From assembly GCF_052425735.1 (NCBI RefSeq), contig NC_135763.1, positions 28,706,001 through 28,770,000 of the forward strand: a DNA stretch of 64,000 bases. Reading direction: 5' to 3'. Below, piece after piece: positions 31,201-37,200 of the stretch. The notes under the pieces were generated by a model. The model saw nothing but the letters and a program-made list of their open reading frames with translations, did no database searches and was not told the origin of the DNA. Both the position numbers and the translations under genes were made by a program. The DNA is from Oculina patagonica (lineage: Eukaryota). Position 1 is the first letter of the stretch. Each line of letters starts with the position of its first letter.

Positions 31201-34200
31201 AGGACCCCTGCGTCGGACAGTTCGATTTTGGGTAGAAGAGTTGGGTAGCCGCCCTCGCAAGGTCGCACATAGAGACCTTACAAACTACACTTCTACAGAA
31301 CAATGAAACAAACAACGGGAACAATGCGCCTAGCCCACAAAAATAGCAACAGTAAATTTGCAATAAGCAATACGAGAGCTGCTAGAGTGAGACTAGGGCA
31401 GGAAACTTAGGCCGTCCGAGACGGGTAACATTTTAAAATGAATGAAATTAACACGACGTACACAACAGGAACAAGTTTATATTAAAAACTAGTAGTAATC
31501 AGAGATTAGGGGAGTGCGTTCGACGTATCTGTAAGGTAAGGTAAGCAGGCAGTGGCAAAAAACCGACATGGTCGGCCTACTAGTAGTATGCCTTATGTCA
31601 AAGTTAGTTTCCATGCTTACTGATACCTCACTAAACGCGAGGAGGATAAGGGTGAGAAAGATTGTGCGACGAGCCAAAATGAATGAAATATTACACAAAA
31701 ATAATTATTTATTTCACTTGACCTGTTATCGTTTGGCACTAACGAGATTTAAACTTCCACAAACTTCGAATTCTGAAAATAATTTTACTTTGATTTAAAA
31801 TTACACAAAGTACTTAAAAATACAGACAATTCACACAGTAATCCACTACACGCATATTACATTCACACAACGATTTCCTCGTCAAAACGTCTAGTGTTTC
31901 TTGGAAGAACGGTATATCACACATTCAAAGAAGTGATAAAACAATTTCGATCCGTATTATACCCACTCTCGATGCATTCAATTCTAACAATTTGTAGTTT
32001 TGTGCAACATATAATTGGAGGAAAATACGCTGGTTTACCTACGAACGAACTCCGTACGAAACTACGCATCGACTTACTCGATTTCCACTCTTTTTACGAC
32101 GTTCGGTGGCTGAAGACAACTCTGCTACCTTGGATGATAACCTTCTAATGTTCTCCATGACATTTTGCCAAAATTACAATTTTGGAAACACTTCTTTAAC
32201 CCTTTTTTTCAAGCAAAATAATGTTTCTAAGCTCCGTTTGGGACGCCATCTTGTTTTGCATAAAATCGAGGCCATGCATCTGTGGCTACCAGTTTCCCGG
32301 CCGAGATTTGCCCCTGCAAAAATCAATCGGGGCGACCAATTTGGAGTCCATACACCTGCGCGCGCATTACGGCTCGATTCATTCCGCATAACAGTGCACA
32401 GGCCTACCAACTCAAAAGACACAGGACGCAAAACAGAATTAGGCTTGCGCTCTCCTTCGTCGAACGCAATAAGGTTAAAACTGTTAAAAAAGACACTAAA
32501 CGTTTTCGATCAATCAGAGTGAAGTCCGAATATGATCATATTGATCGAAAACGTTTAGTGTCTTTTTTGGCAGTTTTAACCTTATTTTTAATATATTTAT
32601 ATCGGCGAAATGTACATAGGAACAAGTTTATTTTAACTACAAAAACAGTTTGGATGCAGGGGACCACGCAACGAAGAAAAAACTGCTTGGCTTCTCTGCT
32701 GCCGGATCTCTTGTTCAAGAAATGCTCGTACCAGACGTCACTCTAAGTGCTTATAAAACCAAATTGATTGCAAGGCTGGTACAACGGCAGGAGGGCAAGA
32801 TTTATTGGCCTGTAGGCGTGCGCTATAGAGGGAATCGGCCATTGCAACAATGGCGTCTGCCAATAAATCTTGCCCTCCTGCCGTTGTACCAACCTTACAA
32901 TCAATTTGGTTTTATTTTAACACTTGTAGGCATATAATCGTAAACGCAAACAACGTTCGTGGTACTTTTCCCTAACGTAGGGGTTAAGTGAACGAATCTT
33001 ACCACTTCGAGCGTCCTTCACAGTTTCAGTGATACCGGCAAATTTCCACTTTGATAAAATAATGATTTTTTCCTAGGAGTCAAGAGCGTCTGGACTGTAT
33101 CGAAAATTGGGCCCAAAAAAATGGAAATTAAGGTCATGGAAATTAACGCTCCAATTAATTAACGGTGCGAAAATAAACGTTAACAAAAATTAACGCAACA
33201 ATCAACGCGAATTTTTGAAATTCGCGTTAATTTCATGAAGCATTATTTTCCTAAACACGGTAATTTCCATGTGAGTCCAGCGGTATGGCATAATTGCAGG
33301 GACATGTTCTTATCAGGCGATCTTTGTCTATCGCTTGTGGAGTGTATCGACAACGTCTTTGTTTCAATTAAAAGAGAGGTCACTGGAAACACTTGGCAGT
33401 ACTGACAAATATGTTCCTTCCAAGAAGAAACGAAACGAAGAGGAATGAAACACGATCGCCCCTAAAAACGACTGCGTGGGAGGCCATTCCGATCTGGGAA
33501 TTATTTCAAAAGTGAAAGCGGAAATGAAAATATTATAATGTTATGCAAAGTGGTTGGCCTAGCATGTCACACCTCGTCAGAAAACATGAACGTGCAACAT
33601 AACAATTGCCGATTCCCTCTATAGCGCACGCCTACAGGTAATCACGGTACTTGTGTTCATCAAACCATGCGCGAGACTCAGCAACGATGCACATTGCTTA
33701 GTCTCGCGCATGGTTTGATGAATACAACTACTGTGATTACCTGTAGGCGTGCGCTATAGAGGGAATCGGCCATTGCAACAATGGCGTCTGGCTGTGTGTA
33801 TGAGACAGATCCAAATGATCCAAGTGATGAAAGCAGTGAAGAACCCGAGACTGGAGTGTTAAACAAAGATTTCGCTGCCCTAGCAATTTCTCCGAGACAA
33901 GATGGAGAATCAAGAATCTCCAACGGAGAATGGATGTCAGATCATCCATGGCAAAGCTGCAAACCGGATCCTAATCTCGAAATGAAAGACTTTGTTGCCA
34001 TTTCAGCTTCGTACAAATTAGACGATGATTGGATTAAGTGTCAGGGAAGGAGACAGGTTGTGGATCTGTCTAAGATCTTCTCGAATCTCCCCATTTTCAT
34101 GCAGTTAGAAATGCAGGGAAGTATAAATGGCAGTAGACAAGAGCTGGAACAGTTAGTCGTCAAAAAACACGAGAACTTTGAGTCACCGCACACGAGAGAA

Positions 34201-37200
34201 ATAGCTGTAAAAAATGTACTCATCCTAACCTCTTTCCAAAAGGACAAAAAATCTTTGCCCGACGACAGACGCTTAAAGGCAACATCCGCCTCTTCGGATG
34301 ATGATTATGTCGGGGCAATATACAATATTGATTGTGAATATATGCTACAAATGAATGTGGCTGAGTCCATGATTCCATGGTTTGATATTCAGCAGTGTGA
34401 TACATTCTATCCCCCAATGATACGAAAGATTAGCTATCCAAACAAGGAAAAGAGGTGGATATTTATACCATCTTTCCGCCGTGCAAACATTGCACTGACA
34501 GATTGGCCAGAAGATGATGTTGTGACCCCAGAATCCACCATCAGAGTACTTGTAGTAAGACCATCAGAGTTCGATAAATATGTGAAGCGCTGTGGGCGCA
34601 GTTTCCCTATTATTTGCCTCCCACAAGATGAAATCGGTGCAGGGTATGCACGATACTGGATCCAGAAAATTGCTCTTCGTTTGAAGCTGCAGTTCATCTG
34701 GATGATTGATGACAGTGTCGAGTGCTTCTACGAGTATCATCCCACTGTAGAGCCACCTTTAGGCGAGAATAAAGATGGCAAGCGGAGGCCGAGCTACAAA
34801 GACCACAGACGGCGAAAATTTGGACTGGTGTTCAAGCGTATTGAAGACTTTGTCAAGGAAGCAGACGACAGTGAAACCCCTATTGCAGCGATGAGTCCAA
34901 GGCGATGGAATCCGCTGTGTCGCCCTAAACAGCCATTTGTGTGTAAGCCTCCACAAGCTGCTGTTTACCTGAACCTCAGAGCGCTTAAGAAAAAGAATGT
35001 GTACTATCGACCGGAACTAAAAACCCTTGAAGACATGATCTTTGGATACGAGTGTGAGAAGAAGGGTTTGAAAGTTTTCATGGATAACCGCATTCTCTTG
35101 AAGGACCACAAATGGAAGGACACTGGAGCTAGAAGTCCATCGGTAAAGGATAAGTGGAACAAATAAACGGCAGCAACTGATTAAGAACATCAAAAAAGTA
35201 ATAGATGTGGAATCTTGAATGACTTTAAAACTCCTAACAGTTTTCTGATCATGTTTTGTCATCTTGTACGTCAAACAATGATTTATAATTGCAAAGAAAT
35301 GACCCCTGCTGGACATGGCCACTTTAAATTGATGAAAAATCCGAGTGGGGTTTCACTGTATTTTATGTTACAATATTTGTTTGTTCACTTACAAGTTATC
35401 CCAAATTAGTGTCACAGTATTAATTACAATAACACTAAATTAATGTGATTTAAACATTTTATTGTATTTTGTATCATATTTACTATGTTGAGGCTCCAGG
35501 ATAATGGACCTTTGCATCTTCCATATTTTTATAACACTTTTTTAGACTTGCCTTCCTCATTAAAAGCCACATCCTCACATCTAACCTTCCTAACAAGGCA
35601 ATAGTTACAGTAAAACAAAGGGAAGAAATCATTTCTTCAAAATACAGTTTTTTGTGAGAACCCATGTAGCCATCTGCATAAACACTACCAACCAATTTCT
35701 GGTTTCAGTTTCAATATTTTTTCCTATAATTTTTTTCTTGGCCTCTATGTATCCACTTACCATGTGTATTTCAGTTTTATATATATTTTTTTTAAAAAAT
35801 TGTGGTTTAATATTGTTGCCTGTGGTTGATTCCAGATCAGGAGTTCTGGGTTCAAGCCTTGGCCATCTCTCTTTGTGTTGTGTTCTTAGGCAAGACACTT
35901 AACTCTCTCAGTGCCTCTCTCCACCCAGGTGTATAAATGGGTACTAGTGAATAACATGTTGGGGGAAACCTGACAAAATGCTGGGGGACCCTGCAATGAG
36001 CTGAGCTAGCATCCCATCCATGGGGAGTAGAAAAACTCCTAGTTGCTTCATGTTATGGAAACTTAGATGAGGAAATTTGGCCTGGTGAGCCACCTGCATT
36101 CCCCAATCCATTAAATGAAAGCACAGTTTAAACATAGTTAATTTAATGTTTGTACTGTAGAGCCTAATAGGATAGGCTGCTAACTGCTTTATAGCTTGAA
36201 ACACGATTTCTACCCAGAAATCCTGCTAGATTTTTTTCTCCACATGAGTTTTTTTCTTGGCAGGTTTTTTTCTGATCTCTGTCAAAATTAATTCTCTTTA
36301 TTTTTAAGTAGTTGCTAAAGTTTCTTGTATTAACACAAGCTAAAGGACGCTTGGGACAAAATTGCTGTCACACTTTTTGTATAGAAATAATTAAGATCAA
36401 AGGACTTGAAACATGTACATTACAATTGAAGCTAAGTAAATACATCTTGTAGATACATTGCTAAAATTTAGGCACCTAAAATAAATTAATTTAACTTGAC
36501 GCATTTTTGTTTTTCCTTGTGTCAGCAATATAATAACTTACTTTACTGGCTTTCAGTACACAAGAGGACACAAAGCCAGGCCATGCTGGCTTCAAGCTAG
36601 TTCAGTTGCAAATGAAACAATTCTTTGCTTTAATTGCATGTACAGGCAGTAAGTCAATTTGTCCTCTTTACCTTGGAAGTTTGGAAGTACACACAACTTA
36701 AAGTTTTAGCTTTTGAGTAATATTTACACACAGACAATAAGGTTTTCATAGTATACATAGCAAAAAAGGTCAATTTATTTCATACTATTCAGAAATTTTC
36801 GTGCAAACAGATGGATCATCCATCCAGATGAACTACACTTCTTAGTTTCAGTCTAGTTTGTCTTCGTTGCTGATTTGAAAGATTAACTTTTACTTATGTA
36901 ATTTCCGTGGGTTCAAAGTACACGTTTCGTGTCACCTGATCATGTAGGCTCCTACCCAGACGTTCTTTTGGTTCGTCACACAATCCTTGCTTCCTAACGT
37001 TCGCGATTCGGCAAGGGGAGATTGCGTGACAAGCCAAAAGAACGTATGCGTTTATAGATCAAGAGGCTACTGATTATGCAATCTAGATAGCGATTTCCCA
37101 TCAAGACATTAGCATCGGGGAAAAAAATACGGAACGCTAGGAGGTAGATAGGCGAAAAGGGGTATGATTTCTTTATTCTTTTATTTACGTTTTGATCACA

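What the first reader, a model, noticed from the sequence alone, without database searches (positions are those of the whole stretch)
32753..32915. Hairpin whose loop is an exact 51-bp copy of the downstream gene's translation start
Seen: CCTGTAGGCGTGCGCTATAGAGGGAATCGGCCATTGCAACAATGGCGTCTG occurs at 32809-32859, clamped by 57-bp inverted arms, and again at 33740-33790 across the ATG of glycosyltransferase 1. Its first 31 nt are also complementary to the H3 left arm (33608-33638), so the H2 loop and the H3 right arm compete for the same partner. Inference: (a) on the host (minus) strand the loop displays an antisense guide to the start codon region; (b) on the + strand it could open H3 like a strand-displacement switch; or (c) it is a captured fragment in a Pack-type MITE or a template-switch scar. 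Perfect identity implies a recent origin or constraint.
Basis: partly seen in the sequence, partly recalled or inferred. Interest (0 to 1): 0.75.

Follow-up and report, generated by a model that had tools for sequence, protein, structure and literature searches.

The report
Retroelement scar holding copied gene start
The hairpin is a tiny, recent insertion of a Penelope-like retrotransposon in the coral Oculina patagonica, and its centre was filled with 48 bases copied from 931 bp downstream; it looks like a template-switch scar, not a regulatory device.

Summary
The 51-mer occurs exactly twice in the window, and in the whole 529-Mb genome (up to 3 mismatches allowed), and it sits between 57-nt inverted arms.

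The arms are not MITE ends. Positions 32638-32913 are a 276-bp insertion of a young Penelope-like retroelement (PLE) family. Full copies of this family encode a reverse transcriptase and a GIY-YIG endonuclease. An 8-bp target duplication (ATTTTAAC) flanks the insertion, which lies inside another repeat. It has the usual PLE layout: an inverted copy carrying a roughly 115-nt "tail", then a sense copy.

Both copies stop within 1 nt of each other, at the predicted cleavage site of a minimal hammerhead ribozyme motif in the element's RNA. At least eight other insertions end at that nucleotide, and two of them form perfect palindromes with no filler.

The "loop" is 48 nt of filler plus 2 and 1 nt of junction microhomology. 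Its source is the last 36 nt of an abundant 173-bp palindromic MITE (H3) plus 15 unique bases that include the ATG of a TAGT glycosyltransferase gene. The loop's complementarity to the H3 left arm follows directly from that MITE's inverted repeats.

I found no evidence of function. The scan's earlier notes on this locus are cited below.

The parts
32630..32637 (.). Left copy of the 8-bp target-site duplication ATTTTAAC.
   Evidence: Removing 32638-32921 gives a sequence that aligns straight across the junction with five paralogous copies of the surrounding repeat R.
32638..32752 (-). PLE 'tail': the extreme 3' end of the element RNA (sense on the minus strand). It is present only on the inverted copy.
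   Evidence: It is 98-100% identical to the same segment in more than 20 other loci, whose flanks are all different. All left copies reach this end and no right copy does. Tails are a known PLE feature (PMC8557442, PMC11167929).
32753..32810 (-). Left arm: the inverted PLE copy, running from the second reverse-transcription start site to G1.1 of the predicted hammerhead cleavage site (GGCC at 32807-32810).
32811..32858 (+). The 48-nt filler, an exact copy of 33742-33789. Junction microhomology is CC on the left and G on the right.
32859..32913 (+). Right arm: the sense PLE copy from G1.2 to the element end ...GGTTTT. It carries two private G-to-A differences at 32892 and 32897.
   Evidence: Every other family copy differs from the window at these two positions.
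32914..32921 (.). Right copy of the target-site duplication ATTTTAAC.
33603..33775 (.). H3: one copy of an abundant, roughly 173-bp palindromic MITE-like repeat. Its last 36 nt are the first part of the filler's source.
   Evidence: At least 737 candidate copies; the 40 scored are 87-93% identical, and the flanks differ at every locus.
33740..33790 (+). Source of the copy: the MITE terminus (33740-33775) plus unique sequence (33776-33790) that includes the ATG at 33781.
   Evidence: Here the sequence runs on into its native context on both sides: the MITE to the left and the 461-aa ORF to the right.
33781..35166 (+). Single-exon ORF of 461 aa with a TET-associated glycosyltransferase (TAGT) domain. 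It donated 10 nt of the filler.
   Evidence: PF20691, E = 1.1e-13; ORF listed.

Best explanation
H2 is a 276-bp insertion (32638-32913) of a recently active Penelope-like retroelement. Both strands of the cut target primed reverse transcription of the element's RNA, which gave two short cDNAs in opposite orientation. These are the two arms, and the left one also carries the roughly 115-nt tail. Both cDNAs ran to the 5' end of an RNA that had been cut at the element's own minimal hammerhead ribozyme site (...GAAAUAUU|GGCCAAU...). In other insertions two such ends annealed through the self-complementary GGCC and formed a perfect palindrome. Here the polymerase first switched template and copied 48 nt of nearby nucleic acid: the end of MITE H3 plus the first 10 nt of the TAGT coding sequence, 931 bp away. 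The template could have been DNA or nascent RNA. The ends were then joined with 2-nt and 1-nt microhomologies. The result is a neutral scar.

Shown: the element's identity, its boundaries and target duplication, the family architecture, the common end point, and the origin and uniqueness of the filler.

Inferred: ribozyme cleavage in vivo, priming on both strands, and that the filler was acquired during integration rather than later.
For: Family identity:
- 32640-32810 is 98-100% identical to many loci with unrelated flanks.
- A 33-mer from the arm occurs 230 times in the genome.
- The full copy L053:265-4584 carries RVT_1 and GIY-YIG ORFs. Its homologues have the RT plus GIY-YIG architecture in many invertebrates.

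Architecture:
- Every copy with both ends inside the fetched locus is an inverted, 5'-truncated copy with the tail, followed by a sense copy. Truncation points and target duplications vary, the latter from 8 to 13 bp.
- This matches published PLE structure (PMC8557442). A purified PLE protein cleaves and extends both strands in vitro and starts reverse transcription at two sites (PMC11167929).
- The target duplication and the empty site were reconstructed from paralogous repeat copies.

Hammerhead motif:
- The motif has CUGAAGA, an extra A, a 7-bp helix II, GAAA, a palindromic UA and U17. The minimum-energy fold gives helix I and helix II.
- The same motif sits behind the ORF of relatives with 86% and 76% protein identity. 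The 76% relative shows two compensatory changes in helix II and G-C at 10.1-11.1.

Same end point at G1.1 in other insertions:
- Perfect palindromes L058 and L059.
- L069, L060, L061, L062 and the tandem units of L067.
- The left copy of L002.

Fillers at family junctions: fillers of 9 nt or more occur at 5 of about 17 junctions, including another of 49 nt in L026.

Filler origin: it is unique to this locus and identical to the source.
Against: - Rfam hammerhead models do not reach threshold. The best hit is HH9 at 12.9 bits, E = 2.
- The covariation rests on three sequences; 56 of 500 shuffles do as well.
- In the anole PLE, ribozyme cleavage was not needed for insertion in vitro, and no RNA-seq reads ended at the cleavage site (PMC11167929).
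- GGCC is a palindrome, so microhomology alone could favour this joint.
- A template only 931 bp away in cis is more typical of DNA repair or replication template switching than of a reverse transcriptase jumping between RNAs.
- The one other long filler in the family (L026) has no identifiable source, so capture of nearby sequence is not shown to be a habit of this family.
- There are no RNA data for the locus.
Confidence: 0.55

Rival explanations
1. The element is the same, but the filler came later. The insertion first formed a perfect palindrome like L058 and L059. The palindrome centre then broke or stalled a replication fork. Repair by polymerase-theta end joining or by microhomology-mediated template switching copied 48 nt from 931 bp downstream in cis.
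For: Perfect-palindrome versions of the same mini-element exist at two other loci. The junctions have 2-nt and 1-nt microhomologies, and GCC is present on both sides of the insert. The template is nearby, in cis and in the same orientation, as is usual for repair-templated insertions (general knowledge, not tested here).
Against: This needs a second rare event in an element so young that its left 171 nt are identical to the family consensus. Fillers are already common at this family's primary junctions. Templated insertions made by end joining are usually shorter and copied from closer by (from memory, not tested).
Confidence: 0.3
2. It is a regulatory RNA device. Either the loop displays an antisense guide to the TAGT start codon on a minus-strand transcript, or on the plus strand it opens hairpin H3 by strand displacement.
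For: The complementarity exists. The hairpin is very stable. Cnidarian small RNAs can act through extensive pairing (from memory, not tested).
Against: All parts are accounted for by transposable-element sequence and one copying event. It occurs only once in the genome, and the related TAGT gene is not shown to have an equivalent. In the predicted fold the loop is partly self-paired across the copied ATG region. No Rfam family reaches its threshold. The poly(A) run gave one read over the 3 kb. Any minus-strand host transcript would already be antisense to the whole gene.
Confidence: 0.04
3. It is a Pack-type MITE or DNA-transposon derivative that captured a gene fragment during gap repair after excision.
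For: It has long inverted arms and a foreign insert between them. The neighbours H1 and H3 are true palindromic MITE-like repeats.
Against: The arms are not terminal: the element extends 115 nt further on the left only. Target duplications vary from 8 to 13 bp. The full-length relatives encode a reverse transcriptase and GIY-YIG endonuclease, and no transposase.
Confidence: 0.02
4. It is an assembly or sequencing artefact: the 48-nt insert is not in the organism's DNA.
For: No contig listed in the read-laying output spans the junctions. Palindromes are known to cause trouble in assembly (PMC8557442).
Against: An assembler has no obvious way to place a 48-nt copy between two arms with clean microhomology joints. 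The rest of the element has a textbook structure with a target duplication. k=31 contigs are expected to break at these high-copy arms, so the lack of a spanning contig says little.
Confidence: 0.04

Closest known systems
Penelope-like elements (canonical EN+ PLEs: RT with C-terminal GIY-YIG) and their complex inverted or tandem insertions with a 'tail'
   Same: It has RT plus GIY-YIG ORFs. An inverted 5'-truncated copy lies next to a sense copy. There is an extension at one end only. Target duplications vary in length, partial tandems occur (L005/L067), and a minimal hammerhead motif lies in the repeat region (PMC8557442, PMC4209133, PMC11167929).
   Different: The tail is about 115 nt rather than the 30-40 bp described. 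This copy is extremely short at 276 bp. Its two halves end at the predicted ribozyme cleavage site and enclose 48 nt of local host sequence. I did not find that combination described in the papers I read.
L1 twin priming and 5' chimeras made by reverse-transcriptase template switching
   Same: Two cDNAs are primed from the two strands of one target, which gives an inversion. They are joined by microhomology, sometimes with extra copied sequence (from memory).
   Different: The retroelement class and endonuclease are different. Here the truncation point is a defined ribozyme site and the copied sequence lies in cis 931 bp away.
Templated insertions at repaired breaks (polymerase-theta end joining, MMBIR/FoSTeS) and centre-break revision of palindromes
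   Same: Short microhomologies at both joints, a template nearby in cis, and a position at the exact centre of a palindrome.
   Different: The 48-nt length and 931-bp distance are at the upper end for end joining (from memory). No independent evidence of a break was found.
Pack-MULE / Pack-MITE gene-fragment capture
   Same: A fragment of a host gene lies between inverted repeats of a mobile element.
   Different: The carrier is a retroelement, and its repeats are neither terminal nor the ends of a transposase substrate.

Membership tests
Penelope-like retroelement (EN+ PLE) | Reverse transcriptase ORF in the autonomous copy. | tested here: met
   L053:775-2094 hits PF00078, E = 1.2e-10. 2784 homologues were found at E <= 1e-10, and most of the 120 listed carry RVT_1 plus HTH_animal, many also GIY-YIG.
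Penelope-like retroelement (EN+ PLE) | GIY-YIG endonuclease C-terminal to the RT. | tested here: met
   L053:2239-2580 hits PF01541, E = 4.8e-8. The same architecture is seen in homologues. In L053 the two domains lie in separate ORFs, so that copy is probably defective.
Penelope-like retroelement (EN+ PLE) | Pseudo-LTR architecture: inverted and/or tandem 5'-truncated copies, with a tail at one end only. | tested here: met
   All sampled copies have it. The tail is about 115 nt, longer than the published 30-40 bp.
Penelope-like retroelement (EN+ PLE) | The window copy itself is a discrete insertion with a target-site duplication. | tested here: met
   The 8-bp ATTTTAAC is present on both sides. 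The reconstructed empty site matches five paralogous repeat copies across the junction.
Minimal type-I hammerhead ribozyme of metazoan PLEs (Cervera and de la Pena 2014) | Core CUGANGA ... [quoted passage not shown] | tested here: met
   The sequence at L053:4511-4556 and its fold, checked against the features listed in PMC4209133. One exception: 10.1-11.1 is G-U here and G-C in the 76% relative.
Minimal type-I hammerhead ribozyme of metazoan PLEs (Cervera and de la Pena 2014) | Structure conserved with compensatory changes in relatives. | tested here: inconclusive
   Two compensatory pairs in helix II and 100% of cells paired, but only three sequences; 56 of 500 shuffles do as well. Rfam models stay below threshold.
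Minimal type-I hammerhead ribozyme of metazoan PLEs (Cervera and de la Pena 2014) | Self-cleavage activity. | not testable with these tools
   This needs an in vitro or in vivo cleavage assay. The only indirect support is that genomic copies end at G1.1.
MITE / Pack-MITE (DNA transposon derivative) | Inverted repeats at the element termini, a fixed-length target duplication and a transposase-encoding partner. | tested here: not met
   The left terminus lies 115 nt outside the left arm. Target duplications range from 8 to 13 bp. The partner encodes RT plus GIY-YIG.
microRNA or other hairpin RNA gene | A match to a curated family at its gathering score, or evidence of expression and processing. 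| tested here: not met
   All Rfam hits are generic long-hairpin matches well below gathering, for example mir-548 at 52 bits against 90. The poly(A) run gave 1 read. The small-RNA runs were not examined.
Repair-templated insertion (TMEJ / MMBIR) | Microhomology at both joints and a template nearby in cis. | tested here: met
   CC and G microhomologies, with the template 931 bp downstream in the same orientation. This fits a repair polymerase and a reverse transcriptase equally well, so it does not tell the two apart.

The most novel reading that the evidence does not exclude
The two arms are run-off cDNAs of hammerhead-cleaved PLE RNA, and the filler is what the PLE reverse transcriptase copied after jumping from that 5' end onto a local transcript. 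That transcript could be the 5' end of the TAGT mRNA or an antisense host transcript. If so, this family's insertions that end at G1.1 are a genomic record that PLE ribozymes cut in vivo and that the cut RNA serves as a template. No RNA-seq reads ending at the cleavage site were found in the anole system (PMC11167929).
Probability: 0.25. Interest if true: 0.55.

Novelty: new member of a known kind. Interest (0 to 1): 0.3.

Why it matters
For the finding as submitted, it matters mainly as a caution. All three "designed-looking" hairpins upstream of this coral glycosyltransferase gene are transposable-element products, and the striking copy of the start codon is a by-product of integration or repair.

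The wider interest lies in Penelope-like elements. The role of their hammerhead ribozymes and the origin of their inverted structures are still open questions. This young family offers a clean set of insertions whose inner ends coincide with the predicted ribozyme cleavage site. It includes perfect palindromes, one copy with filler that can be traced to nearby sequence, and tandem units. That makes the idea that ribozyme-cut RNA is reverse transcribed testable by a simple census and a cleavage assay.

Tried and rejected
- **Rfam, window 32000-34200.** Only sub-threshold generic hairpin hits.
- **Rfam, full element.** Nothing at E <= 0.1. On the 221-nt repeat region there was only a weak HH9 hit.
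- **Read laying.** The k=31 contigs break at the high-copy arms. No listed contig spans the filler junctions. The putative RNA run X4 has flat, DNA-like depth. The poly(A) run X24 gave one read. So there is no information on a transcript start, on expression, or on independent confirmation of the junction.
- **'Empty-site' joints in X1 and X2.** Joints at 32636>32927 and 32635>32948 first looked like alleles lacking the insertion. I withdrew that reading because the element sits in a repeat with at least 329 candidate copies, and paralogues give the same joints. Presence/absence polymorphism is therefore not shown.
- **Source of the other long filler (L026, 49 nt).** No second copy in the genome and no local partial source.
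- **Folding the full 163-nt hairpin.** Over the size limit, so I folded 129 nt instead.
- **Look-ups of the coral's own PLE proteins.** Not on record.
- **Ribozyme scan of more distant PLE loci.** My scanner found nothing in L081, L082, L083 and L085.

Full report
**1. Observation**

The 51-mer occurs at 32809-32859 and 33740-33790 with no mismatch. None of 100 shuffles of the window gave two or more matches. A pattern search of the whole 529-Mb assembly, allowing up to 3 mismatches, finds only these two places.

The 57-nt arms (32753-32809 and 32859-32915) are 96% complementary. The first 36 nt of the loop are 97% complementary to 33603-33638. The stem-loop folds at about -84 kcal/mol on the plus strand and -87 kcal/mol on the minus strand.

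Protein names returned identify the organism as the stony coral Oculina patagonica.

**2. What the arms are**

A genome search with the hairpin returned 109 scored matches from 375 candidates, many of them 100% identical over the left arm and the sequence upstream of it. A 33-mer from the arm occurs 230 times in the genome.

Aligning about 25 loci shows that the shared segment runs from about 32638-32640 to 32810. It has a sharp left boundary, and the flanks are unrelated at every locus. On the right side all copies end at ...CAATTTGGTTTT, and each copy has its own target-site duplication of 8-13 bp.

The longest copy examined (L053:265-4584) contains two ORFs. One has a reverse-transcriptase domain (PF00078) and the other a GIY-YIG endonuclease domain (PF01541). 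Its homologues show the same RT plus GIY-YIG architecture in corals, molluscs, amphioxus and echinoderms. That combination defines canonical Penelope-like elements (PMC8557442).

I mapped all sampled copies onto a reconstructed sense sequence. Each insertion with both ends in the fetched locus consists of two parts. The first is an inverted, 5'-truncated copy that carries an extra segment of about 115 nt at its outer end. The second is a sense copy that lacks this segment. The truncation points vary. Partial tandems also occur (L005/L067).

This is the published PLE insertion pattern: pseudo-LTRs, an adjacent inverted 5'-truncated copy, and a "tail" at one end (PMC8557442). A purified anole PLE protein cleaves and extends both target strands and starts reverse transcription at two internal sites, which explains the tail (PMC11167929).

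**3. The window copy as an insertion**

The element occupies 32638-32913 and is flanked by ATTTTAAC at 32630-32637 and 32914-32921. It lies inside another repeat with at least 329 candidate copies. When the element and one copy of the duplication are removed, the remainder aligns without a break across the junction to five paralogous copies of that repeat. This confirms the boundaries.

The left 171 nt are identical to several other copies. The right arm has two private G-to-A differences at 32892 and 32897.

**4. Why both arms stop where they do**

In the window, the inverted copy ends at GGCC (32807-32810) and the sense copy begins at GCC (32859). Both therefore stop within one nucleotide of the same position in the element's RNA.

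In sense orientation that position lies directly behind a sequence with the hallmarks of the minimal type-I hammerheads described for metazoan PLEs:

- UGGCC, then CUGAAGA;
- one extra A;
- a 7-bp helix II closed by UCU;
- GAAA, a palindromic UA, and then U17 followed by GGCCA, which pairs with the upstream UGGCC.

The sequence is and the criteria are in PMC4209133. The minimum-energy fold gives exactly helix I and helix II, with the two core strands unpaired.

The same motif lies about 240-260 nt behind the ORF in two related elements from other samples. The relative with 76% protein identity shows two compensatory changes in helix II and G-C instead of G-U at 10.1-11.1, while the core is unchanged. 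With only three sequences this is supportive, not conclusive, and Rfam's hammerhead models stay far below threshold.

The predicted cleavage (U17|G1.1) would leave an RNA that begins GGCCAAU..., which is the inner end of the arms.

Other insertions end at the same nucleotide:

- Two loci carry the same mini-element as a perfect palindrome, joined at ATTGG|CCAAT, each with its own target duplication (L058, L059).
- L069 has one extra T at the joint.
- L060 and L062 end there without a partner copy.
- L061 joins that end to the 5' part of the ORF.
- The 95-nt tandem units of L067 begin there.
- The left copy of L002 ends there.

Several of these joints cannot be explained by the GGCC palindrome acting as microhomology. 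I therefore infer that ribozyme-cut RNA was the template and that the cDNAs are run-off products.

**5. What the loop is**

A genome search with H3 shows that 33603-33775 is one copy of an abundant, roughly 173-bp palindromic MITE-like repeat. There are at least 737 candidates. The 40 scored are 87-93% identical and have different flanks everywhere.

The 51-mer therefore consists of the last 36 nt of this particular MITE copy, including its private substitutions, plus 15 nt of unique sequence that contain the ATG of a 461-aa single-exon ORF with a TAGT glycosyltransferase domain. At 33740-33790 the sequence continues into its native context on both sides, so that place is the source and the H2 loop is the copy.

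The loop's complementarity to the H3 left arm is simply the MITE's own inverted repeat. Two bases on the left (CC) and one on the right (G) are shared with the PLE ends, so 48 nt are foreign.

**6. Mechanism**

Fillers of 9 nt or more are present at 5 of about 17 inversion junctions in the sampled copies. One is another 49-nt filler whose source cannot be found. L002 holds a rearranged piece of the element itself. Template switching at the joint is thus a habit of this family.

I therefore favour acquisition of the 48 nt during integration, after run-off at the cut 5' end. A later break or fork stall at the centre of a perfect palindrome, repaired with a nearby template in cis, fits the microhomologies equally well and remains a serious rival.

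If the right-hand cDNA was extended, the template had plus-strand sense, for example the TAGT mRNA. If the left-hand one was extended, the template had minus-strand sense. I could not decide between these.

The read data gave no transcript information and no independent junction-spanning contig. Joints that first looked like empty-site alleles are ambiguous because the flanks are repetitive.

**7. Function and verdict**

Nothing points to a function. No Rfam family reaches threshold. The structure occurs once in the genome. In the predicted fold the loop is partly self-paired across the copied ATG. All three hairpins upstream of the gene (H1, H2, H3) belong to repeat families.

The finding is a real and well-explained transposable-element scar. 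Its residual interest lies in what this family may reveal about ribozyme processing and template switching in Penelope-like elements.

Noticed in passing
window 32468-32586: Hairpin H1 (47-nt arms) is also a member of a dispersed palindromic repeat family. All 40 scored candidates (of 69) matched, at 70-94% identity.
   Followed up: partly
window about 32618-33120: The PLE sits inside a copy of another repeat with at least 329 candidate copies at 78-93% identity. Most of the sequence between H1 and the gene has very high k-mer depth in DNA runs, so the gene's upstream region is largely a pile of transposable elements.
   Followed up: partly
L005/L067 (G000:C8:23929558-23929911): Tandem 95-nt units run from the predicted hammerhead cleavage site to about 38 nt into the tail. 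This retrozyme-like array suggests a third reverse-transcription start site 38 nt into the tail.
   Followed up: no
L026/L057 (G000:C5:15386406-15386454): Another PLE inversion junction carries a 49-nt filler that has no second copy in the genome (up to 3 mismatches allowed) and no partial source within 1.5 kb.
   Followed up: partly
L053, minus strand, roughly L053:50-120 in plus coordinates: A canonical-looking type-I hammerhead (CUGAUGA, 5-bp helix II, GAAAC, palindromic CCAUGG helix III) lies just outside the PLE copy. It probably belongs to a retrozyme or to another PLE.
   Followed up: no
window 32892 and 32897: Two G-to-A differences from the family consensus are confined to the 55-nt right arm, while the 171-nt left part has none. 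This could reflect reverse-transcription errors, cDNA deamination or chance.
   Followed up: no
window 33769-34711 (run X4 contig): A contig from a differently labelled organism covers the TAGT ORF at about 96% identity, with an 18-nt deletion around 34394-34414. It is an allele, a paralogue or a sister-species copy.
   Followed up: no
L053:2616-4394: The 'full-length' PLE copy has about 1.8 kb between the ORF end and the 3' repeat that is absent from the inverted partner copy and from L056. The RT and GIY-YIG domains lie in separate ORFs, so this copy is probably defective.
   Followed up: no
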